In this document: positions 21,029-55,210 of the stretch, piece by piece
Layout: each line of letters begins with the position of its first letter
Numbering within the stretch: the first letter of the stretch is position 1
NCBI GenBank assembly: GCA_025558095.1
Contig: JAIVFI010000001.1
Coordinates: forward strand, 682,001 to 746,000
Reading direction: 5' to 3'
Origin: Hyaloraphidium curvatum SAG 235-1
Lineage: Eukaryota > Fungi > Monoblepharomycota
DNA: 64,000 nt
The notes under the pieces: generated by a model
Database searches by the model: none
What the model was told of the DNA's origin: nothing
What the model saw: the letters and a program-made list of their open reading frames with translations, nothing else
Program-made: the position numbers and the translations under genes

Positions 21029-22709
21029 TCAGTAGCACACCGACTCCATCGTCAAGTAGATTCCGCTCCCTCTCGCCAGCCCCCACAGCGCGAACCCGAC
21101 CGTGAGCATCGTCGCCGCGACCGTCCTCACGGTGCCGTAGCCGACCGGGACGCCCCAGAACCGCATCTCGAGCCCGCGCACGTCCAAGAGGGAGGAAAGC
21201 ATGCGGTCGTGCCTGTCGAGCTCGGACGCGAGGGGGTTCGTGCGGTGCAGGAGCGCCATCCGGCGGAGGGTCTGGCGGGCGGTCATGTAGAGCGCGATTA
21301 CGGAGCGGATCTGCGAGTTTGAGGCGGCGATTGCCACGAAGTCGAGGAAGAAGGCGACGAAAACCCAGGCAGTGATAGGTACGAGCCATGCTGGGATGCA
21401 GAGCCCGCCGATCTTTAACGACGCCACGGCACCGGATTAGCCGAGGCAAATTCCTGGCACTCATAATCGCACCCACAAGGTTCAGAATAACGGCGATGGC
21501 TATTGCGGAGCACATCATGAAAAAGGAAGCCCGGTCTCCTGTGAACAGATGCGGAATCCTCCTCTCCCAGATCCTTGAGAGCAACAAGTGTAGCCGCACG
21601 TAAAGCTCTTCGGAGTTTCTTTCCCCATCCGTACGAGCTTTTCCCTCCTCTTCAGGCGCACGATCGGTGCTCCTGAGCTGGGAATCCAGGCGATCCAGTA
21701 GAGAATCAAGGGCGAGAGACATAGCCCTGAAATGAAGCTTCTCCGCCAGACCCATCGCCGGAAACGAGGCATTGAATCTGGCAGGTGTACCGGTCATGTA
21801 CGCGAAGGCATCCATCGCGTAGTAAAACGCGCCCAAGAGAGCCCACCACCAGGCAAACCAGAACGGACCAGCGAAGGTGACGGCGGCGGTGTACGGAAAC
21901 AGGCACATCCCGATCATGGGGAGCACCATGCGGGTGCATACCTCGGCGGCGCGAGACCACGCAGCACGCGCAGCTACGGCGCCCGAACACGATTGCAGGC
22001 CGCAAGGGCACATTTGATCCCCGTCTCGGTGGGCCACAAGCGCCGACGGGACGTGCCCGAGCTCGACCGCGTCCGCTCCAGCGGCGTCATCCGCGACGCC
22101 CGCACGACCTTGGAGGTCAAGGAGCTCCTTCCATCTGGCGATCGTAGCCAGGGGATGGGATCCGAGATCGGGATCTGCGGCGGCATGCGGTTGCGGGGTG
22201 GAGCGGTTGACTCCTAGCCGTGCGTTTCGTGACGATCCGAAGTAAGTGGCTTTGAACGTGGCCCGGATGAGGGCGAAGGTGAAACACAACAAGTACACGC
22301 AGCTTCCGGCGATGCCGCAGGCAACGGCGCGCGTTGAAAACCGGCCGTCGTTGAGGATCGCAGGCGCGGGGGTAATCGCAAAGGCGAGGCCGACAAAAGC
22401 CAAAAGCCGCAGGCCAGAACGCGCGCTGAGCGGCGACAGTAGCACCTGGATGTCGATCCACGCTGCAAGGTGCCCGCTGAGCGCGCCAATCTCGCGACGG
22501 AGGGCCCCCATGGTCAGTGGGCGCTCCGAACGCGCCAGGGCCGCCGGATCGGAGGGCGACATCAAAGGCCCCGAGCCGGGCGTGCGCCGCGGCGCAGCGA
22601 CCGCGGCGGGAAGGATGGCGAGCCATTCGTCGGGGGTGAAGTCCACGAGGTCTCCGGCGGGCATCTCAGGGGCTCCGGTCATGGCTCCGTGCGGCACACC
22701 GCCTTCCAT
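21029..22709 (-). CDS. Putative 7-TM receptor/ion-channel-like protein (GR/GRL/DUF3537-like), copy 1
   Basis: FTPDEWL, NDGRF, HRDGDQMCPCGLQSC, FWFAWW, EELYVRLH, phase-0 intron 21413-21476, ASNSQI, FWGVPVGYGTVRTVAATMLTVGFALW, MESVCY*. Confidence 0.8.
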
Positions 22710-22881
22710 GAGCAAGTTGCTTATTTGCGCGGTGGCGGAAAAAGAACAGGAAGATTCCTTCGGCCACGGAAGCGCGTGCGGTGGCTCGGCAAGGTCTGCG
22801 GTGAAACTGGCTGGCACCACGGAGAATTCCGAGTTCCTCCCCGTCGTGTTGGGCTCCAGTGCGTATACAAATCAAAGACCG

Positions 22882-23331
22882 CTACCGCCGCCTCGGCCGG
22901 GGCTTGCCCTCACGCAACGCCTGAAAAAGGATGTCATTGCCCATGGCCCGCGCTATTTGAATCCGTGCGCGAAGGCGAGCCGTGTACCGTGCCATCATCA
23001 AACCCCCCACGTCCCATTCCTTACCGTCTGATCCTTCCGGGGGGTGCGCGCGTCGGGCGATCCGTGGGATGAAGGCTGCTGCCGCGGGTCCGAGCCGACC
23101 GTGGGTCTCTTGGCCGAGATGAACATAGGCCACCGGAGCTGGGTCCGGGATCGCAAAGCGACCGTTGAAATATTCCACCTTCTTCGCCTCAGCGTTCGCG
23201 GCCGTCACCCCAGACTCGCGCGCCGCATCCAGAGACTGCGAAATAGACGGGAGGCACACCATGTGGTCAATGATGATCGGTCGCCGGCCCGGCTCGGTGA
23301 TCACGATGTCCGTCGCTGCTAACGCACTCAC
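22882..23331 (-). mobile_element. 3' remnant of an RLE-type non-LTR retrotransposon (CRE/R2-like restriction-like endonuclease domain)
   Basis: D..I.D..., AANAEAKKVEYF, ETHGRLGPAAAAF, RIQIARAMGN match the usual RLE C-terminus pattern (AE..K..KY / ET.G.LG / ..QRGN); no RT present. Confidence 0.7.
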
Positions 23332-23449
23332 GCGGTGTTGTTCGGCTGTGCAAGATTATCTCTTCCAATAATCACGACACAAGCCGCCTTTCTGTACAAG
23401 CGCGCCGTCTTCCCCTTCCGAACCAACATCGTCCATCACCAAGATAGCA

Positions 23450-26195
23450 TCAACCTTCCAACTCAGGCACCGTGGTGGTATAGCGATCAGAGTCCGTGAG
23501 CCGTCGCCAAACCGATTGATGTCCACTCCACAAATGGCGAGGCAAACCCGAGAGGCAGGCGCCAACCTAGCCCGGCCCGTTGTTGAGCATCGCATGCAGG
23601 ATCGCCATGCGGGCCTTGAGCACGGTGCCGAGCCCGGGGCTGCGCGCGGCCGCCGCGACCCTCTGGGGATAGCTCCGGAACACCTCCCGGAGCTTCAGCA
23701 CGGGCGACGCGAGCACGATCTCGCGGACGCCGGGCTCCACGTCCCTGTTGGCCAGCGCCAGCAGGACGCCGATGCGGTCGTCCACGGCGGGCCTGCAGTG
23801 CACCAGGATCGAGTCGCAAAAGGCGCGGGCGAAATCGGCGTCGTAATCGGGCAGGTTGGCGGCGAATGCGGAGATGCAGGAGCGGAGGGCGCAGCGCAAG
23901 TCAAGGCCCCGCTCCGTGGAGGCGATGGCGCTCAGGAGCTTGAGACACCGCGTCGAGCAGCGGTCCAAGGCGATGCCGATCATCTCGGGGGCGTAGATGC
24001 CCACTATCGTGGGGCGAACGAGCACAAAGCTGAACAGGCATTCGAGGGCATCGGCCTCCAGCAGGACGTCGAGCACCCTGCCGAGGACATTTTCGTCGAG
24101 GTCAGGGGCGGAGAGGAGGCCGGCATTGTGCTCCTCGCCGCCTCCTTCGTCGAAATCATTGTAGATAGCGGCCATGGTGAGGCCGGTCTCGGTGATGCCG
24201 ATGTCTTCGGCCTCGATGGCATTCATGCGGTCCTCGATCCACTGCTGTCCCCGCGTGGGCGCCGGGTACTGCAAAGCCGAGGCCAGGTCTTGCGTGTAGA
24301 AGGGCTGCGGCAGCGACGTCAGGGCCCGAGGCGCAGCAGCCGGCGCGCGGTCCCGAACCACGTAGTGCGCCGCCTGGTCGGCAGCCGCGTTGAGTGCGTC
24401 CATGGCGGGCGGGCTGCTGCCGCCGCCGGAGATTCCGCCGGGCCCCGCGTGGTCCGGGCCGGAGAAAGGAGAAGCGGGAAAGTCGTCGCACCACTGCAAA
24501 GGCGGTGAGCCCCGGCTGGGCGGCCCTTTCTGCGAATCGGGCTCGAACCAACCGGAACGAGGCGGCGCCGTGCGATTCCGCGGCGAAAGGGCGCGCGTGT
24601 CTGAGGTTTCCGGACCCGCGCCCGGTCAGGGCCGCCGGCGGCCGAGATACGGGGCGACGCGGCACGCCGCTTGCAATCCGTTACTCGGGGAAACACTCGA
24701 ATGCAATATAGCCGCGCGCTCGTGTCCGCCGCGAGCCGAGAACGTCGCTGAAATGCCGACCCAAAAGGGTGGGGCTGCCCCGGAGCGGCGGTGAGCCCCC
24801 GCCCCTCCGCCGGCGCGCAAAACACCCACCCGAATCCGACCCCGCGTCGCAGAGACGGTGCTGGGCTCCGAGCGGGGGTTCCGGGGGGCGCTGGGCCGGA
24901 ATCGCGGGGGAAACTTGCGCGCGCGGCGGAGGCGCGTCCGACGGCCTTCCGGCCCCTCCGGGGGCCCGAAACGCGCGGAAGGCTACCGATGCGCGCTCCG
25001 GCGGTGCCGAATGGCCCGGCGGAAGCCGATACGCGGCGGGGAACGCCGTCCGAATCCCCTATTTGCCCCGCTAGGCGCCGCGCGCTAGGCGCGGGCCAAA
25101 TAGGCCGTGGAAACGCGTGGAAAAAGGCATCCCCGCGCCCCCGGGGCAGCGGATGGAGCTTTCCCGCTCCCCGAGGCGTTAGCTCGGGTCATTGCGGCGG
25201 CGTTCCGGCCGCCGGGGGCGGGGCGGGCCGCACGGCGTTCGCGGGGCGTGCGCGCGGCAGAAGGGCGCCGCCCCGGCCCGCGCCGCGCGGCGCGCGTGCC
25301 CGGTAGACCCCATCGGCTGCACGGAAACGAAAGGCCGATGGAAGGAGGTCGAAGCGGGTGCGTGGCTCCACGCTGCTTCGCATGGATGGGCCGTTCAAGA
25401 TCGCTCTCAATCTGCTCTCAACTGGTGGCTGAAAACTTGGGCGGCTCTCAACGAGCTCTCAACTCGCCGGGCATCAGAGTTTCAGAGGAATCGGTCCGAT
25501 TTACTCCCTCGAAGCTTGGCAGATGCCGGCTTTAGTCCCTTGGCAACGGAGGAAGTTGGCCTTTCTCCGCGACGAATGCAAAAAGGCGCGAGTTTCCGAC
25601 CCACCGGCCGAATCCCGGGAGTACCTGCGGGAGGACGGACAACGAACACCGATGCTGCAAGCTGCAGCACACTTGAACCTATTGAAGTCCCGATCGCATC
25701 CTGCCGGCCACCGCGGCCTCAACCAAGCGGGTGACACCTCATACTGTCCCCAGAACCTTTCTGCGAGGCCCAATACGATTCTTTCCTTGCCGCTCCTTTC
25801 TGTGTGCTCTGAGAAAGTGCAAATGGAGCCCGGAGCTTGTCTGATTTTTCCGTCGCGAACCATGGGCCGAAGCAGCGGGACGGAACAGTTGTTGCGCTGC
25901 CCGGTGGGAAGTTCGACGCAACCGGGATCGACGTCCAAATGCCCTGGATGTTACCAAAGCTACGTATCGGCTCGAAGCATTGTAGATCCCGTTGTGCTCT
26001 TGCGACTAAAGTGTAGTGTGAATGGACCAAGACGCTCGTTCTGCGCGAGAGGTGATGGGCATCGGCAGTCCCCCGATCCGCCCCGAAAACCGCGGCCGGG
26101 GAGGCCATCCGCCGGGCCCCGTGGTCCCGGATCGGCACCCGTGCCGGCTGGTCGAGGCTCAGTTCGCAGGGGGAGGTCCCTACGGGTTGAGAGGC
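23450..26195 (-). repeat. Repeated module copy 2 (internally rearranged)
   Basis: Same 24-bp motif at 26172-26195; 26058-26240 nearly identical to 20848-21029; 24760-25105 resembles 37750-38105 (rc); downstream flank 23470-23540 resembles 18430-18500. Confidence 0.7.
23567..24403 (-). CDS. Orphan helical family 'A', copy 2
   Basis: LTMAAIYND, LDENVLGRVL, STRCLKLL, ARAFCDSIL, DDRIGVLLAL, SPVLKLR align with copies 1 and 3. Confidence 0.72.
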   Translation of the reverse strand: MDALNAAADQAAHYVVRDRAPAAAPRALTSLPQPFYTQDLASALQYPAPTRGQQWIEDRMNAIEAEDIGITETGLTMAAIYNDFDEGGGEEHNAGLLSAPDLDENVLGRVLDVLLEADALECLFSFVLVRPTIVGIYAPEMIGIALDRCSTRCLKLLSAIASTERGLDLRCALRSCISAFAANLPDYDADFARAFCDSILVHCRPAVDDRIGVLLALANRDVEPGVREIVLASPVLKLREVFRSYPQRVAAAARSPGLGTVLKARMAILHAMLNNGPG

Positions 26196-26239
26196 CCGCA
26201 CTTTCTCAAATCCAAGCGCAGCCAACCTCTGAGCTGTAT

Positions 26240-27918
26240 TCAGTAGCACACCGATTCCATCGTGAGGTAGATCCCGCTCCCCCTCGCCAGCCCCCACAGC
26301 GCAAACCCGACCGTGAGCATCGTCGCCGCCACCGTCCGCACGGTCCCGTAGCCGACCGGGACGCCCCAGAACCGCATCTCGAGCCCGCGCACGTCCAGGA
26401 GGGAGGAAAGCATGCGGTCGTGCCTGTCGATCTCGGACGCGAGGGGATGGGTGCGGTGCAGGAGCGCCATGCGGCGGAGGGCCTGGCGGGCTGTCACGTA
26501 GAGCGCGACGACGGAGCGGATCTGCGAGTTGGAGGCGGCGATCCCGATGAAGTCGATGAAAAAGATGGCGAGGAGCCATGAGACGTAGAGGACGAGCCAC
26601 ACGGGGATGCAGAGCCCGCCGATCTGCGGCGGACGCGCGGGCGGGGATCAGCCGGGGCCTGCCGGGGCTCGGCGATGACACTCACAAGGTTCAGGGCTGC
26701 GGCGATGGCTGCTGAAGCGCACAGCAGGAAAAAAGTGGTCCGGTCTCCCGTGAACAGGTACGGAATGCGCTTCTCCCAGATCCTCGAGAGCAGCAAGTGC
26801 AGCCGCACGTAAAGCTCTTCAGAGGCCGGTTCCTCGGCCATGGCCGGCTTCCTTTCCTCTGCAGACGCACGTTCGGTGCTCCTAAGCTGGCCGTCCAGGC
26901 GATCCAGCACGGAATCGAGAGCGAGCGACATCGCCCTGACGTGAAGCCTCTCGGCCAAACCCATCGCCGGGAAGGAGGCGATGAACCTGCCGGGTGCGCC
27001 GCCGAGGTACACCCACGCACAAATCGCGTAGAACAACGCGCCCAAAAGAGCCCACCACCATGCAGACCAGAACGAGCCTGCATAAGTGACCACGGCTGTA
27101 TAGGGTATGAGGGTCGCGGCAACCATCGAGGTCGCCCAGCGAAAGAAGAACTCGAAATCGCGGGACCATGCCGCACGTACGGCGACGGTACCGGAGCACG
27201 ATCGGAGGCCGCAGGGACACATGGGATCCCCCTCCCGATGGGCCACGAGCGCCGACGCGCCGTGCCCGAGCTCGATCGCGTCCGCGCAAACGTCCCCGTT
27301 TGCGGGCCCGCCGGGGCCCTGCAGGTCGAGAAGCTCTTTCCATCGGGCGATCGTGGCCAGGGCGTGGGATCCGAGGTCGGGATCGGGGGCGGCCGCGGAT
27401 GCCGGGGCTGCGCGGTCGGGTCCCTTTCGTGCGTCTTTCGACAATCGGAAGTAAGAGGACGAGTACGCCGCCCGAAAGAGGCCAACGGAAGCGAAAAGCC
27501 AGATTGCGCAGAATCCGGCGGTGCCGCAGGCCACGGCGCGCGCGGAGAACCGCCCGTCGTTGAGCACCGCGAGCGCGGGGCTGAGCGCGAGGCCGGCGGC
27601 GCTTTGAAGCACAGGACGCAGGCCAGGACGCGTGTTGAGCGGCGCCAGCAGCACCTGCAGGTCGATCCAAGCCGCGAGGTGTCCGCTGAGCGCGCCAATC
27701 TCGCGACGGAGGGCCCCCGTGGTCAGTGGGCGCTCCGAACGCGCCATAGCCGCGGGGTCCGCTGGCGACGTCAAGGGCCCCGAGCCGGGCGTGCGGCGCG
27801 GCGCGGCGACCGCGGCGGGAAGGATGGCGAGCCATTCGTCGGGCGTAAAGTCCACGAGGTCTCCGGCGAGCATCTCTGGCGCTCTGGTCGTGGCTCCGCG
27901 CGGCACACCGTCTTCCAT
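26240..27918 (-). CDS. Putative 7-TM receptor/ion-channel-like protein, copy 2
   Basis: Same motifs as copy 1; phase-0 intron 26624-26685; last exon almost identical to copies 1 and 3. Confidence 0.8.
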
Positions 27919-34039: not shown

Positions 34040-35675
34040 ATGCCCGCCGGAGACCTCGTCGACTTCACCCCCGACGAATGGCTCGCCATCCTTCCCGCCG
34101 CCGTCGCCGCGCCGCGCCGCACGCCCGGCTCGGGGCCCTTGACGTCGCCTACCGATCCCGCTGCTCTGGCGCGCTCGGAGCGCCCGCTGACGCCCACGGC
34201 CCTCCGTCGCGAGGTCGGCGCGCTCAGTGGGCACCTCGCGGCTTGGATCGGCCTGCAGATGCTGCTGTCGCCGCTCAACGCGCGTTCCGGCCTGCGGTTT
34301 TTGGCCTTTACCGTCGCCGCCCTCGCGCTTACCCCCGCGCCTGCGATCCTCAACGACGGGCGGTTGTCCACTCGAGCTCTGGCCTGCGGCATTGCAGGAA
34401 GCTGGGTGGTCTTCCTTTTTTCCACTGTCGGCCTCATCCGAGCGACGTTCAGGGCAACGTACTTCGGATCGTCGCGAAACGCACGGCGAGGAGCCAACAG
34501 CCGCACCCCAGCACCGGTCGCCGCCCCGGATATCGATCTCGGATCCCATCCCCTGGCTACGATCGCCAGATGGAAGGAGCTCCTCGACCTCCAAGGCCCC
34601 GCGGGCGCTGCGGATGAAGCCGTTGGATCGGACGCAGTTCAACTCGGGCACATTCCCTCGGAGCTCGTGGCCCACCGGGACGGTGATCCGATGTGCCCTT
34701 GCGGCCTGCAATCGTGTTCGGGCGCCGTAGCTGCGCGTGCTGCGTGGTCTCGCGCCGCCGAGGTATGCACCCGCATGGTGCTCGCGATGACCGGGATGAG
34801 CCTCTTTCCGTACACTGCCGCCGTCACCTTCGCTGGCCCGTTCTGGTCTGCCTGGTGGTGGGCTCTTTTAGGCGCATTCTACTACGCAATGGATGCGTTC
34901 TTTTACCTCACCGGCACACCTGGCAGATTCAGTGCCTCGTTTCCAGCGATGGGTCTGGCAGAGAAGCTTCATTTCAGGGCGATGTCTCTCGCCCTCGATT
35001 CTCTACTGGATCGCTTGGATTCCCGGCTTACGAGCACCGACGGTGAGGCTGAGCAGGACGAAAAAGCTCGTACAGATGGGGAGGAAAACTCCGAAGAGCT
35101 TTACATACGGCTACATCTGCTGCTCTCGAGGATCTGGGAGAGGAGGATACCACACCTTTTTACGGGCGACCGCACGAGCTTTTCCCTGTTGTGCTCCGGA
35201 GTGGCTATCGCCGTTATTCTGAACCTTGTGAGTGCAATCATAAGTACCACAGTTTCGCCTCGGCTGATCCGCGGTCGTCGCCTCGTTGCAGATCGGCGGA
35301 CTCTGCATCCCGGCATGGCTCGTTCTCATCACCGCCTGGGTCTTCGTCATCTTCCTTCTCGACTTTGTGGCGATCGCCGCCTCCAACTCGCAGATCCGCT
35401 CCGTCGTCGCGCTCTACGTGACAGCCCGCCAGGCCCTCCGCCGCATGGCGCTCCTGCACCGCACGCACCCCCTCGCCTCCGAGCTCGACAGGCACGACCG
35501 CATGCTTTCATCCCTCTTGGACGTCCGCGGGCTCGAGATGCGGTTCTGGGGCGTCCCGGTCGGGTACGGCACCGTGAGGACGGTCGCGGCGACGATGCTG
35601 ACGGTCGGGTTCGCGCTGTGGGGGCTGGCGAGGGGGAGCGGGATCTATCTCACGATGGAGTCGGTCTGCTACTGA
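34040..35675 (+). CDS. Putative 7-TM receptor/ion-channel-like protein, copy 3
   Basis: Close paralogue of copy 1; phase-0 intron 35228-35291; the upstream ATG used by copies 1/2 is absent so start placed at MPAGDL. Confidence 0.8.
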
Positions 35676-39700: not shown

Positions 39701-41383
39701 ATGTTGCCTGCGGGCGACGACACCGAGTCCGGCGGACTTGAGCTTGGCAAATGGGCGGACGACCCGGGGACGGACGACCGGGCGGAAGGGCCCGGAGAAG
39801 CGCGGCGGAGGCGCGTTCTCGCGGGCTCCGCGGCAGCGGGACCTCCGTCGTCGGCCGAGCGCAGCGACTTCACGCCGGAGGAATGGCTCGTTCTTTTTCC
39901 ATCGCCGCTGCCTCCTTTGGACGCGTTTGGAGGCATTGGCTTCTCGCAGCACGCCGATCCGGCCGCGGCTCTGCGTGCAAGCGAGCCGCTCACTGCGGAC
40001 GCAATGCTACGCGAATTTGACCACGCGGTCCTGCATCTCGCGGCGATATTGGGACTCCGCTCGCCACTAGTATGGAACACATGGCTTGCCGCCGCGGCCT
40101 TCGCGCTGAACGGCGCCATGTCGCTCGCACTCCTGGGCACCGCGGCAGCATGGAACGACGGGCGCTTCACGCCGACGGCGATCGGCGTCGGGATTGCAGC
40201 CGTGGCCCTCTTGTTCGCGTCCTTGTTTACGATCTTTGCGAGTGCTGCCGTTAGTTGGCCACCGATCTCGAGTGTGATGGACTTCGTTGCGCCGGCTGGC
40301 ATGTTTCGGTGGCTTCGCGCAGTGCGGAGAACAGACAACCGGCAGTTGCAAGCCAAGGGCAATGCTTCCGCCGCCGTCGGTGGCAACCTCCTTCAGCACC
40401 TGCCGGACGATCCAGACTGCCCTTGTTCGAGCTGCTTGCCGAAAGTGCAGCTCTTTGCTGGGGTATTGGCCTTGCTCGACGAGATATCGAACGGTGCCTT
40501 CTTCATTACCATGCTCTTCATGATGGTCTTCACGCCCTACGTCACGTTTGGCGGTCGGATTTGGACCACCTGGTGGAGTGCGTGCATCGGGGTCTTGAAC
40601 GGTAACGTGCTTGCCGCATCTCAAATCCTTAACATTCACGCGTAGCCCTCTACAACAGCTCTTTTCGTGCTCTCGTTTGTTTTCAACACTTCCGGGCGCT
40701 TCTTAACGATCGCCAACTTGGCTTACGCGGCTCTCGAACGCCGCCTTCTGCGACGCGCAACGACACTTGCTATGCAAGACCTCATTGCGGCCTGTCACGA
40801 CGCCGCATCAGAGGCGGACAACTCGGACGGATTCCGCTTGCTTCGCGGCACTGGCTGGCTCTATGCGCACCTGCACTACCGGTTTGCGAGCGTCTGTCGC
40901 GTAAGGGACAAGCAGGACCAGGCCTTCGTTAGCAGGCTCGTGGCGATCACCGGTTTCCCCGCCGCCATCATTGGCATTCTGCTTTCGATCACGACGGGAC
41001 GATGCTTACCAGTCTGGCTGCTCATCTTTCTGCCCACACAAGTGCTTTACTTTACCGTGAACGCCGTCCACGTGGCGTCGCGAAACGCCCTCCTCGACAC
41101 GGTCGCCGGCGTCTACCGCGACGCGCAGCGCGAATTGCGCATGCTCGCCGTAGCCGCGGGCCCGGGCCCGCTTGCCGACGCGATCGGGCTGCACGACGCC
41201 GCGATCGCGTCGTTTCTGGAGGCTTCGAGGTACCGCGCCAAGATGTTCGGGTTCACGGTCGGATACGGGACCGTGCGAACGTTCCTGGTGACGCTGGTGA
41301 CGGTCGCGGTGGCCCTGTGGGGCGTGCTCAGGGGGTTTGGCGTGTTTGTGACTGTGGAGAGCTTCTGTCCGTCGGAACCGTGA
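39701..41383 (+). CDS. Putative 7-TM receptor/ion-channel-like protein, copy 4 (divergent)
   Basis: FTPEEWL, DPAAALRASEPLT, NDGRF, HLPDDPDCPCSSC, IWTTWW, LYAHLH, GRCLP, FGFTVGYGTVRTFLVTL, VESFC; intron 40602-40658. Confidence 0.8.
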
Positions 41384-41894: not shown

Positions 41895-42315
41895 GGCGTT
41901 GCGCGGGGTTCTTGCGAGACGGTGGGTGGAAATCAGTCAGTCACGCGGCTCTCCGCGAAATCAGTCAGTCATGGAGCAGCGCGGGGCTGGTGCCGATGAA
42001 AGAGAACCAAGAAGGTATTCATCGCTGCACTGAACCATCACCCGATTTGCTTGCGATCAATCATTAATGGCAGAGAAGTTTGCACTCGGGGCGTGCGCCA
42101 GGATTGCACTTCTTTGTCGGCTGTGACGCCGCCCCTTTCTCAATCTTGTCCGGTCCACCTATTGTGCACGCAGAGACAACTCCGCGACTCGCGCTGTCTA
42201 TAGGCAGAGCGAACTGCTGCGGTCGACGCGCGTTCTGCCTTTGGAGCGAGTTTACCTTCCCGTAAGCGCGGCCGTGTCTCCCAAACAACATCAGACCCAG
42301 CAACACAGAAACGCG

Positions 42316-43470
42316 ATGGCCCCGAAACCGCTAGGCGTCGGCATCATCGGCGGGTCGCCCGACCGCGGGTGGGCCGTGGACGCGCACATCCCGGCGCTCG
42401 ACGCGCTCGGGGAGCTCTACAAGCTCACGGCCGTGGCGACGAGCCGGCCCGAGTCCGCCAAGGCCGCGGAGCAAAAGTTCGGAGTCAAAGCCTACTCGGA
42501 CCACCGCGAGCTCGTTGCTGATCCCGAGGTGGACGTGGTGGTGGTGTCGGTCAAGGTGCCGGAGCACTTCAAGCTCGTCTCGTCGGCGCTCGAGTCGGGG
42601 AAGCGCGTCATCTGCGAATGGCCGCTGGGCAACGGGGCTGCCGAGGCGGCCAAGCTCGCCGAGGAGGCCGCGAAGCGCGGGATCCCGAACCTGGTCGGGC
42701 TCCAGGCGCGTTCGGCGCCCGCCTTCAACTACATCCGCGATTTGATCAGGGAAGGCTTCGTCGGCGAGATCATGTCGACCTCGGTGATCGGCAGCGGCAA
42801 CTTCCCGGCCGAAGCCTCCGTGCCGAGCTTCTACTCGTACCTCCTGGACAGGAAGAACGGCGCCACGACCCTCACGATCCCGTTCTCGCACTTCACTGAC
42901 GCGATGCAGTACGCCCTGGGCAGGGAGTTCGTCGAGGTATCTGCGAACCTCGCCGTGCGGCGTCCCAAGGTGCCCGTGGTCGGCGGCGGCGAGCTGGAAG
43001 CCACCGCACACGACCAGATCTCCGTCTCGGGCGTGCTCGAGGGCGGCGCCCCCGCGACGGTCGCTTTCAAGTTTTACCGGTCGCCCGGGGCCAACTTTTT
43101 GTGGGAAATCAACGGGACCAAGGGGGACCTGAGCATCACCGGACCCTCGGGCCACGTTCAGATGTTTGACGTCGAGATCAAAGGCAGCCAGCACGGCAAA
43201 GCGCTGGAAGCCATGCCGGTGCCGGAAAAGTTCCACTGGGTTCCCGCGGGGGTGCCCAAGGGCTCGCCCTTCAACGTCGCGCAGGCGTACGTCCAGGTCG
43301 CGGACGACTGGGCGGGGAAGGAGGTGGCGGGAAGGTCGCCCGCGCCGACGTTTGCGGACGCGGTGAAGCAGCACCGGTTTGTGGAGGCGATCGAGGCGGC
43401 CGCCGAGACGGGGATCAAGCACGTCAGGGGCAGCGACGGGCTGTGGAAGCCGGCGGCGGCGAAGATATAG
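42316..43470 (+). CDS. Gfo/Idh/MocA (Gal80-like) oxidoreductase
   Basis: GWAVDAHIPAL, SVKVPEH, CEWPLG, GLQAR, TLTIPFSH, WEINGTKGDL, PTFADA; intronless; C-terminal AKI. Confidence 0.92.
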   Translation: MAPKPLGVGIIGGSPDRGWAVDAHIPALDALGELYKLTAVATSRPESAKAAEQKFGVKAYSDHRELVADPEVDVVVVSVKVPEHFKLVSSALESGKRVICEWPLGNGAAEAAKLAEEAAKRGIPNLVGLQARSAPAFNYIRDLIREGFVGEIMSTSVIGSGNFPAEASVPSFYSYLLDRKNGATTLTIPFSHFTDAMQYALGREFVEVSANLAVRRPKVPVVGGGELEATAHDQISVSGVLEGGAPATVAFKFYRSPGANFLWEINGTKGDLSITGPSGHVQMFDVEIKGSQHGKALEAMPVPEKFHWVPAGVPKGSPFNVAQAYVQVADDWAGKEVAGRSPAPTFADAVKQHRFVEAIEAAAETGIKHVRGSDGLWKPAAAKI

Positions 43471-43495: not shown

Positions 43496-45485
43496 TCACT
43501 CCGTTTTCGCCCGCTTGGCCTCCCGTTCACCCTCCTCGTTTTCCGTCCCGCTGCCCTCGGATGACTCTACCACGTCCACCGGCTCCGTCGCCGCCTCCCG
43601 CGGCACCTTCCCGCCCATATCCCTTTCGAACATGTCGATGTACGACTGCCGCCCGCCCGCGGCCATGGCCTCGCCCACTTTGCCCACGTACCGCGTCCGC
43701 GGGTCGATCCCCACCGAGGCGTCCGAGGGCACCGTGTCGGCCGTCGACGCCTTGAGCGCGCGGAAGAGCGCGGCGTGGTCCGCGAGCAGCTGCTCTTCGG
43801 CCTTTGCGAGGGAGGCGGGGTCGGCTCCAGCAGCGTGTGCCTTGAGCAGGGGCTGCAACCGATCACCGACGATCCACATGGCGTCCAGAGCGCTCAAGCA
43901 GGCATGTGCACAGCCCGTTCCGAGGGGCCAGAAGGGCTCAAGAAGACTGGGGAAGCGGGGGAAGGCAGTGGCGGCGGCGGGTGTGTGTGGCGGGTCGTGT
44001 CACGAGTTCACGGAAGCGAGGTCAGAACCAAAGCATAGAAAGGTGCAAGCTACCGACGAACCTATCGCCGAGCGGGCATGCCAGAACGATCCTGTCGTTG
44101 TACCTTACGAGCTTGCTCGGTTCCGTCGCGTTGCTCTTCTCGCTGAAGTCGAATATCGCAACGTCGTTCGACTTTCCGTCCACCCCCGTCATGAACTTTG
44201 CCTCCTCCGGAATGCCAACGGCCAGCGCGACCTTCCTCACGCACTCCTCGAGCTTTGCAGGGTCCACGTTCGAGGGCGCCAGTATCTTGTCCATGGTTGA
44301 AAAGTCCTCGCGAAGCACGCCCTGCCGGAGCAGGTTCGCCTCGCGGATGCACATGACGAGGTAGTGGGTCTCATCCTGATAATAGACGAGGTTCTCGAGC
44401 GCGACGCCGTGCTCGCGCTCGATCTCGCCGAACCACTGCTTATTCAGATAGGACACGTACCCGCCCTTCTTCTGGATCTTCTTGCACGCGAGCTCCACGC
44501 GCGGGTCCTCGCGCGAAAAGTTGCAGGTGATGCCGATCGCCTGCGTCGGGCGGAACCCGGCGCGGCCGAAACCCAGGGCGGCGGTGAGCTTGGAGTGCTC
44601 GCCCGTGCAGCAGAGGAGCACGTTGCAGGGGTACGGGTCCAGCGACGGGTCGGAGAACTTCGGGTCCAGCATGGCGGGCGGCTTGCTGTCCTCGTGGCCG
44701 GGCTCGGCGCCCGGTTCCGGTGCCGCCGCGGGCCATTCGAACGAGACCTCAGGGTGGACCTCGGCGCCGACCAGCAGGGCCAGCTTCAGGAGCGCCAGCT
44801 GGAGCCGCCGGATGGCGATGTGCTCGATCCCGCCGACGCCGAACTTGGCAAAGACGTGCTTGAGACCGATCTTCTTCAGGTCCGCCATGGTCCATGGCCA
44901 CAAATGCAATACGTTGTGCCTTGTAAAGGTGGCCCGCTTCTCGACAACCTTTACCTGCCTGCAGCGCAGGAAGCAGGCCTCGATTGCCGCGCGAAGTCCA
45001 GAGGGGCCGGCGCCGACGCAGAGCACGACGGCGTCGGGCGCGCGCTTGATCGCGTGCGCGTCGCGGAAGTTGGCCTCGAGCGTGTCAAAGAGCGCCTTTG
45101 CCGAGTAGCTCCCCGGCGCCGTCGCGACGAGCAGCTCGGCGAACCCGCGCGGGAGCGCGTCGTCCTTTGTCAGCTCCTCGACGCGGGATGCGAGGCCGTC
45201 GGAGGAGACAGCCGCGCGTGCAGCAGTCCGGTACGCGTCAAAAGCGCCCACGATCGATGCCACGGGGCCATCGTTGTTCAGAAACTCGCCAAAGAGCGCG
45301 ATCGGGTTGCCCGGCGGGCCGGACGCGTCTTCCGAAGGCGCCGGAGCGGGTGCGTCGGCCGGGCCAGGCGGGGGATCGGCGGGCGTCAGATGCGGCTTCG
45401 GGGGCACCGGCGGCGGCGACTTTGCCGCCAGCAGCGATACGGGCTTCGGAGGCACGGGCGGCGCGGCGGCCTGTCGGTCCTCCAT
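43496..45485 (-). CDS. MICAL-type FAD monooxygenase domain protein (stand-alone)
   Basis: GAGPSGLRAAIEA, VVEKRATFTRHNVLHLWPW, HIAIRRLQLALLK, LENLVYYQDETHYLVM, DVAIFDF; after intron 43947-44061, GDSLLEPFWPLGTGCAH. Confidence 0.88.
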
Positions 45486-45935
45486 GCCGCGTCCGGGAGA
45501 GCGGCGAGCGGAGCGGGCGGAGTCTTCGGCGGCGGCACACGCAAAACTGCGTTCTCCCAATGTCCCCAATGGGATTGGCGCCTCCTTCCCAGGTCCACAC
45601 GTGGGCCGCAACCACTATGAAATCCATGCGCAAGGCCGAACTAGGTATGTTCGCCGTTGCGTCGCCCAGCATGCGCGATCGAGGCGTCCGTGACCGAGAT
45701 TGCCGGCGGCCTTCGACAACCGGATCTGATCTTCTTCTGCGCAAATCAGCACGCCGGCAGCTCCTGCGATCGGCCTTCCATCCCAAACCGGGTTTGCTGG
45801 GCCTGCTGGCGCAATCTCGGGCTAGAGTCCGGACCGGGTGCTCCCAGAACACCCGGAAAGCCGCGCCGCGTCGGTAAACAAGCCGACGCCGGCACCTTTC
45901 GCGTCACAACGCGTTCGGGCCACGCGTCCACCGAC

Positions 45936-48900
45936 ATGGACCTCCACCGCCGGTCGCGCATCGGCGGCGGGTTCGCCGGCAACGGCGCCGTGAACGGCGA
46001 GTACGACGCCGACTCGGACGCGGAGCTCTCGACGGCCAAGACGCCGGCGCTCAAGCGGTCCAAGGCCGCAAAGCGCTACGTCGCCGAGCGCGCCGAGTCG
46101 GACGGCTGGGAGCGGCCGACGGCCGTGCTTTTGGCCGCCGTGTTCGCCACGTTCCTGTTCATCCACTGGCACTTTTGGAGGACGCCGGCGCCGGTGGCCG
46201 CCGCGGGAGCCTACGCGCGCGGCAACGTGCCCGTGTTCTCGGAGGAGATCGCCCGCGGGCACATCAGGCACCTGTCGGAGACAATCGGCTTCCGGCAGGT
46301 CGGCACGCGGGCCCACGAGGACGCGGTGCAGTGGACGGCCGCGGAGCTCGAGCGCATCCGTGCCGCCGCGCTGGAGCGCGCCAAAGAGGGCAGCTACGAG
46401 CCCCCCGTCTTCGAGGTCGAGGTCCTGCGGAGCACGGGCTCGCACCGCTTCGACATCGCGGGCAAGATGGTGCACAAGCTCTACCACGGCATCCCCTCGG
46501 TGCTCGTCCGGATCTCGTCGCAAAAGCTGGACGGCGCGCTGCCCCGCGAGGAGCGCTGGGGGCTGCCCTCGGTCATCCTCAACTCCCATTTGGACACCAA
46601 CTACGGTTCGGCCGGCGCCGCGGACGCCGCCTCGGGGATCGCCGTCCTTCTCGAAACCGCTCGGATCCTCTCGCACCGCCCCACCTCCTCGTGGCGCAAC
46701 CCCGCCGTTGTCCTGTTCAACGGCGCCGAAGAATCGCTGCAGGACGCGTCGCACGCCTTCATGCTCTCCTCGCCGCACAACCGCTCCGCGCGCGCGCTGA
46801 TCAACCTCGAGGCGTGCGGGCAGGGAGGCAGGGAGGCGCTGTTCCAGGTCAACTCGCGCGGCATGGCCGAGGCGTACAAGCGCGGGGGGAGGAACTTCCA
46901 CGGGTCGAGCCTGGCCAACGACGTCTTTGGCACGGGCTTGGTGCTCAGCGATACCGATTTCCGCCAGTTCATGGCCTACGGCGGGGACGAGGTCGTCGGG
47001 GTCGACCTGGCCTACTACACCAACTCGTTCGTCTACCACACCATGAAGGACGTGGAGCGGACCATGGGCGTCGGGTCGGTCCAACACATGGGCGAGAACG
47101 CGGCGGGGATGGCGGGGTACCTGGTCGGCGAGGACCTGTCGGATCCCAAGTTCAGGAGGAAGACCGACTTCCTGCACTTTGACTTTCTCGGTGGGCTTTT
47201 CTCGCCGTCGAGCTGCGCAACTTGCTGGCTGACGTCTCGTCGCCAATTCCAGGGAGCTTCATCCTCTATTCGTGGAGCTTCGCCGTCCCGTTCCACCTCA
47301 CCGTGGCCGCCGCCGGCGTCGCGATCTGGCACGCGCACTACCGCCGCGAGCTCGCCGCGCACCCCAAGCTCCGGCAGGGCGTCAAGGCCTCCCACTTTGC
47401 CGCCGCCGCCTCGCTCGTCCTCTCGATGGGCCTCGCGGCCGCCGGCGCCTCCTCGGCCAACCTGCTGCACAAGCTGCTGGGCGTCAGGAGCATGGTCTGG
47501 TTCTCGCGGGCGTGGCACCCGGCCATCCTGTTCGGCTCCGCGGCGCTGGCCGGGATCGCCGTGGGGCAGCACCTCGCGAGGATCTTTGTCGCCGCGCGGT
47601 GGGAGCCGCTGGCCAGGAGCGCGGCGATCGAAGCCCGGACCATACACGCGCTGCTGCTGGACTACTCGCTGCTGTTTGCGGTGGCGACGCTGGCGGGGGT
47701 CGGCAGCAGCTTCCTGCTCCTGGTGCAGGTGCTCGGCCTGATGGCCGCGTGCCTCGCCGCGCAGTTTGTCAGCCCCGGTCAGGCGCCCAAGACGGGTGCA
47801 TTGGTGCACCAGGAGCCCACATACCCGGCTCGCCCTCCCTTGGCCTCGTACCTGCTGCAGCTGGCCATCTCGGGGCCGCTCACCATGGGATACGCCATCT
47901 CGATGTCGGAGCTCTTTGTGCCACTCCTCGGCCGCATCGGCCACGCCGCCCCCGCGGACGCCATCGCCGCCGGTCTAGGCGTCGTCATCTCGGGCCTCGT
48001 TGCCGTCGTGCACGCCCCCTTCATCCACCGCTTCGGCGAGCGGCACGGGCGCAACACCGCCCTCGTGCTCACCGTCCTCGCCGGTTTCATCGCCCTCTAC
48101 TACTCCACCAAGTTCCCGTTCGACGACAAGGCGCCGAAGCGGCTGTACGTGCAGCACCGGCTCAACGTGACCTCGGGCGAGTCCTTCCTCGACATTGCCC
48201 ACGCGGACCGGGAGGCGAGGGCGCTGGACGAGGCCGTGGCGGCGGTCGAGGAGCGGATGGGGATCTGGAGCGGGCAGCCGGCGTCGGAGCGGATACAGGC
48301 GCAGACCGAGGCGGACCATGCGGCCAAGGTGCTCGAGTGGGAGGCGCTTTACCCGTTCAAGTGGGTTCGATGCAGATTGGGCGTCGCAGGAGCTTGACTG
48401 ATTGCGCGTCTTGCCAGCTACTTCCTCAACTCGATCAGGATCCCTGCCGCGACGGTGCTGGCGGCACTCGGGGAGCCGTACTTCGCCCCCGAATCGAGGC
48501 CCGCCGAGCCCTCGGTGCACCTCCTCTCCTCGACCTGGAACGCCGGGTCGGGCACACGGGACGTGCACCTCGAGTTCCGCCACAAGGGCCTCATCTCGTG
48601 CACCGCGTCCCTGGGCGGCGAGGTGATCGCGTGGGACCTGGACTCGCCGATACCCGAGGACGAGGACTCGGACCCGTGGAACCCCTCGGTGCGGTTCAAG
48701 CGCGTGCGGCACGTCATCCGCACCGTGGGCGGGCTGGACGAGGATACCTTCACGGTCCGCGCGACCGTGAAGCACGATTCGGAGGATGCCAAGCTGCGCG
48801 TGGACTTCTGGGGGCTGGACCGGAGGTCCTGGGGCGAGGGCTCGGGCGATTTCGGGCCGCACGGGGACAAGGGGACCGGGTGGGAGGGCGGCGAGGTGCT

Positions 48901-48979
48901 GCGCTTTGCGAGGACGGCGCTGCCCCAGTGGACGGCCCCGATGCTCGTTGCCAGCGTTGGCGGGGTGTGGTGGTTCTAG
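45936..48979 (+). CDS. M28 metallopeptidase, ERMP1/Pff1-like, multi-TM; 2 introns
   Basis: LNSHLDT, GAADAASG, FNGAEE, NLEACG, SDTDF, YHTMKD, TM block, FPFDDKAPKR. Confidence 0.93.
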
Positions 48980-49035
48980 CGACATGGTATGATCGCTAGA
49001 TTCGGAACTCACGAGAGATACACGCTTTCGGCTCG

Positions 49036-50837
49036 CTACATGTGCGTCGGACAGATCGATTCCATCGTGACGTAGATCCCTGAAATGCGGAAGATCGACC
49101 AGAGGCCGACCAACAATGTGAAAACTGTGATGAGCACGTTGCGCGCTACCATCGCATCCACGGCGAACCCGAGCAGCTTCCCCCTGAACCGTTCTACGCT
49201 CAGGAAAGATTCCAGGGCGAGGTCATGGCGCCGCGCCATTTGCAGAGCCACGCGCCGGGACGGATCCGAGCGCAGCGCCATCGTCCTCAGCTCCTTGCGC
49301 GCGGAGAGGTAGAGGTCCGTGATCACGGTGATCTGCGAATTGCTGACGGCGATGTTGACCACGTCGATCGTGAGGATCAGGATCGCAAAGCAGGTGATTC
49401 CCAGGAACCACCCGGTAACGCACATCCCAGCGATCTGTAGCAAGAATGGTCAAGATCGAGAGTCCACGACAGCCGGAATTGACGCGACAAAACTCACGAT
49501 GTTGAGGATCAAATTAATCGGGACCATGAAAAACGTCAGCACCAGTATGACTGCACCCGAGGCCAGGAGAGGTAGCCGCTCCTCCCACGACGCGGTGAGC
49601 GAGTCGTGCAGCTTGACGTACAGCTCCTCGCTCTGCTCCCCGTGCGCCGCATCCACCTCCGGCCCGAACAAGGCCTTTCGCTGCCGGTCCAGCATGGAGC
49701 TAAGCGCAATGCTCATCGCACGGTGATGCAAACGCATGGAGATGCGGAGCAGAGAAATGTTGCCGCTGAAGCGGGCGGTGAGGTTCACGACAAAGTACAA
49801 GGCGCATGTGGCGACTTCGACCGAGTTGGATCAGAACAGCGAGGTGCATTTTCGAGCTCGAACCTACCACTGAGGACTCCAAAAGTTGCAAAGTACCACG
49901 TGGTCCAGAATCTCGGTCCGAATGATACAAGGGAAGTGTACCCCAGAGCGATCGCGTATGTGAAAAAGCACAGTGAAAATCTGATGGCATACTCCATCAC
50001 CCTCAAGTGTCCGCTTTGCTTCAGTAAAGCGCCCGCGCAGCTCGGCAGGATGCACGGGCAGAGCGGATCCGTGTGATCGTGGCGGACGAGCTTCGAGGCT
50101 CCCTCGGCCTGCAGCTCCCCTTTCTCCTCTTTCGAAGGGGCGTTTTCCATTTCCACGTCCGCACCCGCTTCGATGAGCTGGACCCATCGAACTGCCGGCC
50201 CGAGTGGATGCCGGCTCAGGTCCCCAGCAGCGGCCGCTCGGCCCGGTTCAGGGCGGGTCACGGTTGCGCGCAGACCGATAAACAGCGGGCCAATGACCAG
50301 AGCCAACAGAAAGACGCTGATATTGATGGTCCCTGGAAACGGCAAGGGGCCCATTAGCGTAGGAGAGGGCCGCGGGTGCCTCAACCCACCAATGATGAGC
50401 TGGCTCGTCCCGAAGCGGCCGTCGTTGAGGACCCACATGGCCACCACCACTCCGATCGTGGGCACCAGATACAGAAGGTATCGCTCCAACATTTTGGCTG
50501 AGAAGGGCGCCAGCCACAGCTGGAAGGCGCAAATGAGCCGCTGGGGAGTGCTGCCCCGCAGTCCGCGCAGGAGCGCTTCCTCGTTCAGCGGGTCCGAGAG
50601 GCGCAGGTGCTCGGCAGGATCATAGGGCCGATATTCGCCGAGCGACGGTGGTCTCGGCGGCCGGGAGGGAAACAGGGTGAGCCATTCCCGGGGCGTGAAC
50701 GAGGCCGGCGCGGACGGGGGCGCGGAAGACAGGGTGTCCGCGCCGTTCAGTGCGTCGTCGTCGGGTGCGCTGCTGCGCCTGAAGGATAGCGTGCCCGACG
50801 TGCCGGGCATGGTCGCGGACTCGGAATGGCCGTCCAT
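49036..50837 (-). CDS. Putative 7-TM receptor/ion-channel-like protein, copy 5 (divergent); 3 introns
   Basis: FTPREWL, DPAEHLRLSDPL, LNDGRF, HPL...RW, HDHTDPLCPCILPSC, FWTTWY, LHHRAMSIAL, EELYVKLH, shared intron before IAGMC, AVSNSQI, LLGFAVD, MESIC. Confidence 0.8.
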
Positions 50838-50978
50838 TGTCTTGTGACTGGAGGCGGTTCTACGTGGAAGAGCGATTTCTATTTGGAACGCGGGGTCCCT
50901 GCGCAAAGCTGGCTGGCGCTGACATCATTTTGCCACGCTGAAGTCGACCAGCGTTGAATGCATGTTGCTTCGGCTCAA

Positions 50979-52032: not shown

Positions 52033-52147
52033 TTCCAGGGGTCGCCGGCCCGAGTAGGTGCTGAATGAGAGCCGCTGCCGCGCTCCACTATTTGCCTCCC
52101 GCTTCGATCGTCCCGGTCAACTGTCCCCCAAGCTCCATCTCGTGGAC

Positions 52148-53537
52148 ATGACCGCCCGCGCTGTTCCCGCCGACGCGTCGGCAGCCGCCACCGATCCTGC
52201 CGTCCTGCAATGGATGGTCGGCTCCCCGCCTCCTCCCGAGAAAGTCATCAGGCACAGCGACGTGGAGGCCAACGGACTACCGCGCTTCTTTTCTTTCCCG
52301 TGGTGCCGATGGGGATTCGCTAGCCTCAGACAGCTGTACGTTGCTTGTTCAACGTGTCTTCCGTGAAGCTCGGGCTGAACCGCAGTTCTCGAAGTGTTCC
52401 CACGGTGAAGATCTCTCGTGGCGATGGCCCAGTTTCGGAGGTTCCGAGAGGCGAAAGAACGGACCTCGACGACGTCAAGTACACGCCACTGGGGTCGTCC
52501 GAGCAGCTCACCTGGAAAGACTCGCTGGACCGCAACTTCACGGACGCCATTGTGATCCTTCACAAAGGCACGATCGTCTACGAGAAGTACTTCGGGATCA
52601 TGGCTCCGGACCGTGAGCACATGGCTGCCAGCGTCACCAAATCCTTCACGGGGATGCTCGCCTCGGTGCTCGTTCACGAGGGCGTGATCGACGAGAATGC
52701 GCTCGTGACCAAGTATGTCCCCGAGCTCGAGGGGTGGGTCATCCGCTCGTGGTTAGCTTCACCGCCGCTCACCACGCTTTGTTCAGGTCGGCTTTCGGCG
52801 ACGCCACCGTACGAAACGTGATGGACATGAGAACCGGGGTTGCCTACACCGAGGACTACGCCGATCCCGATGCGGGCATCTGGGAGGCGCTGCGCGCCAC
52901 GAACTTCTTCCCCCGGCCGGCGGGCTACTCTGGCGCCAGGTCGACCTACGAGTTCCTCGTGAAGCTGAAGAAGAACGGTCCCCACGGCGCGGACTTCAAG
53001 TACAAGACCGTCAACACGGACGTCCTCGGCTGGATCATCCGCCGGGCGACCGGGAAACCCTACGTGCAGCTGCTCTCGGAGCGGTTCTGGGCGCCTCTCG
53101 GATGCGAACGCGACGCATCGATCTCGGTGGACGAGGAAGGCACCGAGTTTGCCGGGGGCGGCCTGATGCCCTGCCTCCGGGATCTGGCCAGGGCCGGCGA
53201 AATGCTCCGGCTGGGTGGCAAGTTCAACGGACGGCAGATCCTGCCCGCGGCCGTGGTCGAGGACATCCGGCACGGCGGCTCGCCCGAGGCGTTCAAGGCG
53301 TTCGGGGCGCCAACGATGCCCGGGGGCGCGTACCGCTCGCAGTTCTGGGTGACCAACAACGAGCACGGGTGCTACGCAGCTCGCGGCGTCCATGGGCAGG
53401 GCATCTGGGTGGACCCAAAGGCGGACGTGGTGATTGCCCGGTTTGCCTCGCACCCAATCTCGACCAACGCGCAGATTGATCCGCACACCCTTCCCGCCTA
53501 TGTGGCCGTAGCAAAGCACTTGGCGCTCAAGCATTGA
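52148..53537 (+). CDS. Beta-lactamase-fold serine hydrolase, 6-aminohexanoate-dimer hydrolase (NylB)-like; 2 introns
   Basis: WMVGSPPP, ASVTKS (SxxK), MDMRTG, FKYKTVNTDVLGW, YRSQFW, ARGVHGQ. Confidence 0.9.
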
Positions 53538-53591
53538 AGGGCTCACAACTGCATTGAATTCGAAACTTCGTAAACTCAGGCTTAAGGGCCG

Positions 53592-55210
53592 TCAGAGGCC
53601 CGTAGGGCAGAACGTTTCCATTGTGAATCTTACGCCCGCCCCTTTCGCGATCGAGAAAGCTGCGACGCCCAGGGTGACCAGTGTCGCACCGAACGCCCTC
53701 ACTGCGCCGAAATCCACTTCAAACCCGAGGACCCGTACCATGCTGGACCTTCCTTGGCCTACGAGCGCGTCCAGCCGTGCGTCATGTGCGGCAAGCTCCT
53801 TTGCCGCTGCTGCTTCAGTATCACCGTACCGCGCGATGGCGAGGAGACGGTCGCGGATTGGTAGCTGCGCAGTGCAGAGGAGGTCCGTGAGGATGTGGAT
53901 CCGGGAGTTGAACGCTGCTACACTGAGGAGGAGAACGGCGTAGTAGTTTAAGTACCATGCCACAACAAAGATCTGCCAAGCAGTGACGCAGCCAAAAGCA
54001 ATCTGCATCCCAGGAGGGTCGGGAAACGTCATCGGGGCTCAGACTCTGGAACAGCACTACCTACAGCCGTCACGGCAATGCCGGCCAGCACGATAAGCAT
54101 GGCCCCGGAAACCATCTTGTTCAGCGCCCTCAAGGGCCCAAAGAGGGACCCGTCTTTCCACGACGCTGCAAGGTGCAAAAAAATGACAGCGTAGGCGTCG
54201 CTCGCGGCAACGCCATCGGCAGAGGAAGTCTCCTCTGCTGCCGAGCTGGCCGAGCCGGATTCGTAAGCGTTGATCAGAGCGTTGAGTGCGTCCGAGAGAG
54301 CCCTCCGCTGCACGCGCATAGTGAGCTCGGTGACGGGAATGGCCGGGATAAGGTCAATATAGGTGCTTGTTCCGGTCACGGCGACTAAGAAAGCGAGTAT
54401 CACTGCAATTGGTCCAAACGCAATAGAGTCGGTCGTTTGAGCATTCAACCGCAGTCTCCGAAGGGCACTTACAGTAGATTGCGCCAAAAGACGCACCCCA
54501 CCAAGTGAACCAAAAGGTCTGAGCATGCGAAACAAATGCCGTCCACGCAAAGCAGAGGTAGAACGCCGCGCAAAGCCCAAAAATGGTGCACATAACACTG
54601 ACGTAGCTGATGCCGATCCAGACCGCGTTCTCGCGGACGCAGGCTGGGCATGGGCAAAGCGCGTCGCCTTCCACGTGGCGCACCAACGGGGACGCCTGCT
54701 TGCTCTCGCCGCTGCCATCTTCAAGCAACCTGGCCCACCTGTCGATCGAGGCAAGAGGAAGGGCGGAGTCGAGGTTTGGGTTGGGCAAGACCAACTTGAA
54801 AGGTACGCCGCGCAGATTGCGGAACCATATGGCAGCAACGAACGCGTTGGGGGCTAGTAGTACCAAGCTGCACACGGCAATCGAAGCCGGCGAAAAGACG
54901 CTCGGGGCCCACAACGCAGCGGCTGCGGCGGGCAGCGCGGCGAGAGCGCCGAACCAGCGACAGCGCCGCTAACGCGCGAGACCACAGGCCACGGCGCAAC
55001 CAACGCGTGCGCAGCGAGCGCGTAGCGACCAAAAAGCGGCGCGCCGATCGCCGCACAAGCCGCCCGGAACGTCTGCGGGCGGCACCGGGAAGAATCGCGG
55101 TGCGCGGACGCCGCCTCAGCGCTGGGGTCTGGCTTTGCGCGCCCGCCCGGCAGCGGCGCCGCCAGCGCGCGGATGTTGGGCAGCACTGCGAGCCACTCTT
55201 CCGGCGTCAT
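53592..55210 (-). CDS. Putative 7-TM receptor/ion-channel-like protein, copy 6 (most divergent; apparent frameshift near 54960)
   Basis: MTPEEWL, PLASIDRW, HVEGDALCPCPAC, FWFTWW, RRALSDAL, shared intron before IAFGC, AFNSRI, LGFEVDFGAVR, METFC. Confidence 0.72.

What the first reader, a model, noticed from the sequence alone, without database searches (positions are those of the whole stretch)
21029..55210. Six-gene expansion of a putative gustatory-receptor-like 7TM ion channel family in a fungus-like genome
Seen: six paralogues (21029-22709, 26240-27918, 34040-35675, 39701-41383, 49036-50837, 53592-55210) with about seven hydrophobic segments, no signal peptide, a long helical loop between TM4 and TM5, and a conserved C-terminal (F/L)xG(F/V)xV(D/G)xxxxRxxxxTxxTxxxxxW/F segment. 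Known: insect GR/OR, eukaryotic GRLs and plant DUF3537 proteins have an intracellular N-terminus, long TM4-6 helices and a split TM7 preceded by a G-F-x-hydrophobic-D turn, and small numbers of GRLs are reported in chytrids. Inference: this is a locally expanded, diversifying chemoreceptor-like channel repertoire and the best candidate for an undescribed system here.
Basis: partly seen in the sequence, partly recalled or inferred. Interest (0 to 1): 0.9.

Follow-up and report, generated by a model that had tools for sequence, protein, structure and literature searches.

The report
Huge fungal insect-chemoreceptor-fold channel family
These six genes are a small sample of roughly 420 unannotated membrane-protein genes in the non-swimming aquatic fungus Hyaloraphidium curvatum whose predicted shape best matches insect smell and taste receptor channels, whereas the chytrid fungi described so far have one such gene.

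Summary
The six paralogues are real and at the stated coordinates. Five are intact. The sixth (53592-55210) has a frame change near 54947. The genome is Hyaloraphidium curvatum.

The expansion is genome-wide, not local. The six belong to four subfamilies; only three arose by local duplication.

TM7b is the most conserved helix and TM1-6 diverge, as in insect receptors. Best reading: a lineage-specific 7TM ion-channel repertoire, probably ligand-gated. Channel activity, ligands and expression are untested. I found no paper describing it. The scan already reported this family from other windows of this genome.

The parts
21029..22709 (-). g1, 538 aa, two exons (22709-21477, 21412-21029); His/Cys motif at 22002-22031
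26240..27918 (-). g2, 538 aa, two exons (27918-26686, 26623-26240); His/Cys motif at 27211-27240
34040..35675 (+). g3, 523 aa, two exons (34040-35227, 35292-35675); inverted duplicate of g1 (86% aa identity)
39701..41383 (+). g4, 541 aa, two exons (39701-40601, 40659-41383); separate subfamily, 44% identical to the folded paralogue P0094; His/Cys motif at 40397-40426
49036..50837 (-). g5, 561 aa, three exons (50837-49868, 49814-49498, 49434-49036); separate subfamily; His/Cys motif at 50052-50081
53592..55210 (-). g6, about 494 aa when read with X at the break; introns 54403-54472 and 54003-54064; frame change near 54945-54950 (pseudogene or assembly indel); His/Cys motif at 54648-54677
34673..34717 (+). 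His/Cys motif of the first cytosolic loop, shown for g3; candidate metal (zinc) site, inferred
35466..35636 (+). Split TM7, shown for g3: cytosolic TM7a, G-F/V-x-V hairpin, membrane TM7b (candidate pore helix); residues 479-523 are identical in g1, g2 and g3
35228..35291 (+). Phase-0 intron at the TM5/TM6 junction, shared by five of the six genes

Best explanation
The six genes belong to a Hyaloraphidium-lineage family of about 420 seven-transmembrane ion-channel-fold (7TMIC) proteins, distant relatives of insect odorant and gustatory receptors. Shown by computation: seven helices, N-in topology, long TM4-6 anchor helices, split TM7 and best structural match to OR/GR. Inferred by analogy: subunits form tetramers through the conserved cytosolic anchor; four TM7b helices line a cation pore; and the variable TM1-TM6 bundle forms a different small-molecule pocket in each paralogue, so the repertoire reports many external chemicals. 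The near-invariant cytosolic His/Cys cluster probably binds zinc as a structural or regulatory site. The invariant Cys at the start of TM6 and the Cys at the C-terminus probably form an extracellular disulfide. I put 7TMIC fold membership at about 0.88 and ligand-gated sensory channel function at about 0.55.
Confidence: 0.55

Rival explanations
1. True 7TMIC homologues, but not environmental chemoreceptors. They could be non-self or contact receptors for parasites, bacteria or mates, or intracellular or non-conducting membrane proteins like the uncharacterised PHTF and DUF3537 members.
For: The long IL1 is the Class-B/PHTF-like form. The Y and Q of the GRL motif are absent. ESM features also score TMEM39 at 0.93-0.94. 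The organism is non-motile. Large clustered, fast-turnover families are also typical of non-self recognition (own knowledge).
Against: The outer loops are only 4-8 aa, which leaves little surface for a macromolecular ligand. Divergence sits in the membrane helices that form the pocket in GRs (S2-S6; PMC12635824). TM7b keeps a conserved small/hydroxyl stripe (T454, T458, T461, G465, S468 in P0094 alignment numbering).
Confidence: 0.3
2. An unrelated seven-helix family (transporter, enzyme or scaffold) that resembles OR/GR only by convergent helical packing.
For: Sequence identity to OR/GR in the structural alignments is 6-13%, rmsd is 5-6 A, Foldseek TM is under 0.5, and there is no profile match.
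Against: Two separate models both rank the OR/GR representatives first over nearly the full chain, while unrelated hits mostly cover 90-180 residues. All qualitative criteria of PMC9998090 are met, including the unusual split TM7.
Confidence: 0.1
3. A mostly non-functional amplification (retrocopies, element-borne copies, or haplotig double counting).
For: Many members lack introns. g6 is frame-shifted. Some hits have in-frame stops. A few small contigs repeat larger ones (C17/C47 and C30/C48 rows with identical scores).
Against: Purifying selection. Only 2 of the 150 best C-terminal matches and 2 of 85 full-length matches contain a stop. The profile hits 472 clusters at 50% identity. Environmental relatives at 48-50% identity sit inside individual subfamilies.
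Confidence: 0.05

Closest known systems
Insect odorant and gustatory receptors (OR, Orco, GR; Pfam 7tm_6/7tm_7)
   Different: 6-13% identity and no Pfam match. Very short EL2. Long IL1 with a His/Cys cluster. A conserved 60-80 aa N-terminal cytosolic part. TM7 motif lacks Y and Q. The chain extends past TM7 into a Cys-bearing tail.
Chytrid GRLs SpunGRL1 and SpalGRL1 (Spizellomyces; PMC7746228)
   Same: Early-diverging fungus, 7TMIC secondary structure, one of four TM7 motif positions kept.
   Different: Single copy against about 420. They were found by sequence similarity to GRs and inferred to be Class-A, whereas this family has no detectable similarity to GR profiles.
Class-B (PHTF-like) eukaryotic 7TMICs (bioRxiv 10.1101/2023.08.30.555482)
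   Same: Core fold plus a long first intracellular loop; similar Z to insect receptors (PHTF1 12.9).
   Different: No match to PF12129. I found no mention of such a His/Cys motif or of an expansion in the passages read. Phylogenetic placement was not tested.
Plant DUF3537 proteins (PF12056)
   Same: 7TMIC superfamily; ESM feature score 0.90-0.91.
   Different: No HMM match in 56 family members scanned. Families of 4-12 genes with a long IL3.

Membership tests
7TMIC superfamily (criteria of PMC9998090) | Seven predicted TM segments | tested here: met
   Seven hydropathy peaks in the 141-sequence profile and in the 53-sequence profile; DeepTMHMM not available
7TMIC superfamily | Intracellular N-terminus, no signal peptide | tested here: met
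   Positive-inside proxy: 13.1 against 2.2 K+R, 141 of 141 sequences; N-terminal mean hydropathy 0.04
7TMIC superfamily | Intracellular loops longer than extracellular loops | tested here: met
   68, 74, 60 aa against 7, 8, 4 aa
7TMIC superfamily | TM4, TM5, TM6 extended into a cytosolic anchor | tested here: met
   Helices 240-301, 314-360, 365-412 in model 2; same pattern in model 1
7TMIC superfamily | TM7 split into TM7a and TM7b | tested here: met
   Helix 417-433, two short strands, helix 449-472; 476-495 and 506-529
7TMIC superfamily | TM-score about 0.5 or more to Orco/OR | tested here: inconclusive
   Foldseek TM by target 0.45-0.46 at best; TM-align, the published measure, could not be run; accepted members go down to 0.47
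7TMIC superfamily | Tetramer with TM7b-lined pore; ligand-gated cation conductance | not testable with these tools
   No multimer prediction or assay available
Animal GR/GRL | TM7 motif (T/S)Yhhhhh(Q/K/E)(F/L/M) | tested here: not met
   Thr 97%, then V/L for Y, S/G/T for Q, V/I/L at the last position; register set from my memory of the GR hairpin spacing
Pfam 7tm_6, 7tm_7, Trehalose_recp, DUF3537, PHTF1-2_N | HMM match | tested here: not met
   No match in 56 members at E up to 0.1 or in window exons; genome searches were blank but had no positive control
Class-B (PHTF-like) 7TMIC | Long first intracellular loop | tested here: met
   IL1 68 aa in P0094, about 85-100 aa in L010 and g3
Class-B (PHTF-like) 7TMIC | Phylogenetic grouping with PHTF-like proteins | not testable with these tools
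   No Class-A or Class-B sequences or models could be fetched
GPCR / rhodopsin-type 7TM | N-out topology and rhodopsin fold | tested here: not met
   N-in bias; no GPCR or rhodopsin among the listed rows

The most novel reading that the evidence does not exclude
A non-flagellated fungus independently built an insect-scale repertoire of about 420 ligand-gated 7TM ion-channel chemoreceptors from a distinct 7TMIC lineage with a cytosolic zinc-type His/Cys module. This would be an ionotropic chemosensory system in fungi and a parallel to the insect OR/GR radiation.
Probability: 0.5. Interest if true: 0.9.

Novelty: new variant of a known kind. Interest (0 to 1): 0.74.

Why it matters
The function of 7TMICs outside animals is an open question. 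The reported non-animal families are small: one gene in each of two chytrids, up to six in the protists listed, and 4-12 in plants (PMC7746228). A repertoire of about 420 diverged genes, under purifying selection where tested, suggests that this fold was recruited a second time for broad chemical sensing. Many members are intronless, and close paralogue sets such as g1-g3 share an identical pore segment but differ in the pocket helices. That makes the question 'are non-animal 7TMICs ligand-gated channels?' directly testable. It would also be a first clue to the unknown lifestyle of Hyaloraphidium.

Tried and rejected
and protein 2 used the wrong frame (35291 instead of 35292) and were discarded; one search is the corrected search.

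Pfam scans and the PDB sequence search (only KCNQ1 at E 0.1) gave nothing usable. The ESM Atlas structure search gave only TM 0.22 or less by query.

The joined step was left out of every database search and fold. Joined models were used only inside local scripts (alignment, dN/dS, tree, comparison with proteins already fetched).

Rejected: an intron explanation for the g6 break; a GPCR reading; a purely local six-gene expansion.

Full report
OBSERVATION. I call them g1 (21029-22709, -), g2 (26240-27918, -), g3 (34040-35675, +), g4 (39701-41383, +), g5 (49036-50837, -) and g6 (53592-55210, -). With GT-AG introns of 53-70 nt, g1-g5 give stop-free proteins of 538, 538, 523, 541 and 561 aa. The introns fall in only two alignment columns: phase 1 within TM4 (g4, g5, g6) and phase 0 at the TM5/TM6 junction (g1, g2, g3, g5, g6). 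Paralogues lacking an intron read straight through the same column. This supports the splice models without RNA data. g6 changes frame near 54945-54950. The only GT-AG pairs that restore the frame would remove much of TM1, so g6 is a pseudogene or has an assembly indel; it was read with X at the break. A family profile finds these six and no others in the window. Identities are 73-86% among g1-g3 and 26-36% otherwise.

ORGANISM AND SCALE. The nearest database proteins are NCBI 'hypothetical protein DFJ74DRAFT' entries of Hyaloraphidium curvatum, on contigs whose lengths equal those of G000. This is a monoblepharid-related fungus without flagellum or rhizoid and of unclear lifestyle (PMC6899921; PMC8371127). 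The last exon of g3 matches 150 of 150 scored places in the genome at E below 3e-16, out of 523 candidates. A full-length profile matches 85 of 85 scored places, out of 883 candidates. All six genes carry H-x3-D-x2-C-P-C. As DNA, this motif occurs 312 times against 2 for the reversed control. The same spacing with another middle residue adds 96 against 27. Dividing by the share of known members that carry each form gives 421-427 genes. This probably errs low, because weaker members carry the exact motif less often, though a few haplotig duplicates inflate it slightly. Independently, the profile hits 472 clusters at 50% identity among 1.84 billion proteins. Of 20 high-ranking clusters looked up, 18 are H. 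curvatum. I could not see the tail of that list, so relatives in other fungi are not excluded. Three environmental proteins (a Logan contig, a JGI metagenome and an ENA metagenome) nest inside individual subfamilies; two of them are 48-50% identical to their nearest H. curvatum paralogue. A neighbour gene on the Logan contig has a 61-65% identical, intron-split counterpart in G000. The radiation is therefore shared with related organisms and is not recent.

LOCAL STRUCTURE. In a tree of 73 members, the six fall in four separate groups: g1-g3, g4, g5 and g6. g1 and g3 lie in an inverted duplication that extends into the 3' flank. Each of g1-g3 is followed on the same strand by a gene of a second, unknown family found only three times in the genome, so g1-g3 arose by triplication of a two-gene unit. 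Six genes in 64 kb exceeds the 0.85 expected (Poisson 0.0003; 0.011 for four lineages). The window is a cluster, but it holds only about 1.4% of the family.

ANATOMY. The 141-sequence profile has exactly seven hydrophobic peaks and none at the N-terminus. Loops on the N-terminal side are 60-74 aa and those on the other side 4-8 aa. Near-membrane Lys+Arg averages 13.1 against 2.2 and is higher on the N-terminal side in all 141 sequences. That is N-in, C-out, the reverse of GPCRs. Nearly invariant positions are the His and three Cys in the TM2-TM3 loop, Arg in the TM4 extension, a Cys at the start of TM6, Asn in the TM6 extension, the Gly of the pre-TM7b hairpin, Arg and Thr in TM7b, and a C-terminal Cys. 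On this topology the His/Cys cluster is cytosolic, which fits a zinc site. The other two Cys are outside, on short strands in both models, which fits a disulfide. Both are inferences; I had no coordinates to measure.

MECHANISM. TM7b is the most conserved helix in the family (entropy 1.8 bits against 2.8-3.1 for TM1-6). It has a small/hydroxyl stripe at i, i+4, i+7, i+11 and i+14. Among g1-g3 the last 45 residues are identical, with dN/dS 0.04 and 0.00 at dS 0.24-0.31. TM1-2 runs at 0.56-0.61, and whole genes at 0.24-0.30. Conversion may contribute for g1/g2, whose 3' flanks are 179/181 identical. Conserved anchor and pore with divergent pocket helices is the pattern described for ORs and for 7TMICs generally. 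In GRs the ligand sits among S2-S6 (PMC12635824). I therefore infer tetrameric, ligand-gated cation channels with a shared pore and paralogue-specific pockets (0.55). Tetramer, conductance, ligand, location and expression were not shown. The animal TM7 motif keeps only its Thr. If my remembered register is right, the gate position stays hydrophobic and the position one turn below is Gly/Ala, so gating would differ from Orco. The main rival (0.3) is a true 7TMIC family used for non-self recognition or an intracellular role.

COMPARISON AND NOVELTY. It works like insect OR/GR by fold. It is not a member of the GR/GRL, DUF3537 or PHTF sequence families. Its long IL1 is the Class-B form, but placement was not testable. 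Published fungal members are single genes in two Spizellomyces species (PMC7746228). The two structure-screen papers do not mention Hyaloraphidium in their text, and five literature searches found no description of this family; subscription journals are not covered. This scan has reported the same family from other windows of this genome, with similar counts. I recorded my reading before looking, and those notes are not independent support.

VERDICT. Observation confirmed. Fold interpretation supported. 'Local six-gene expansion' is replaced by a genome-wide family of about 420. New variant of a known kind; interest 0.74.

Noticed in passing
window 18531-19310 (-), 23570-24499 (-), 38615-39373 (+): A second, unknown, apparently soluble family (29-35% identity; no Pfam match for the two copies scanned) with only these three copies in the genome, each 1.7-3 kb downstream of g1, g2 or g3 on the same strand. 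It diverged far more than the channel genes beside it.
   Followed up: partly
window 20848-21028 and 26059-26239: 3' flanks of g1 and g2 are 179/181 identical although the genes are only 73% identical and g1 is closer to g3; suggests recent gene conversion.
   Followed up: partly
window 44025-45611 (-): ORF with a MICAL-type Rossmann (monooxygenase) domain, Pfam PF25413, E 6e-26; MICAL is best known from animals (own knowledge).
   Followed up: no
window 35905-36603 (+): ChaC-like gene lies between g3 and its downstream partner and is absent from the g1 and g2 units.
   Followed up: no
window 45657-48976 (+), 42241-43467 (+), 11847-13268 (+): Peptidase M28 membrane protein and two GFO/IDH/MocA-type oxidoreductases (the first two by Pfam, the third by eye).
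   Followed up: no
window 52324-53534 (+): By eye, a serine beta-lactamase-like hydrolase (SxxK motif), tail to tail with g6; not scanned.
   Followed up: no
G000 C17 vs C47, C30 vs C48: Identical match scores on large and small contigs suggest that some small contigs are haplotigs, which slightly inflates counts.
   Followed up: no
P0007 and P0094, Atlas feature search: TMEM39 (PF10271) scores 0.93-0.94 against this family, above DUF3537; whether TMEM39 has a 7TMIC-like fold is worth a check. Unnamed ciliate clusters score 0.95.
   Followed up: no
L010:259-1881: The apparently intronless paralogue carries an 18-codon in-frame insert at the shared TM5/TM6 intron position, probably an intron read through; other long 'intronless' ORFs may do the same.
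   Followed up: partly
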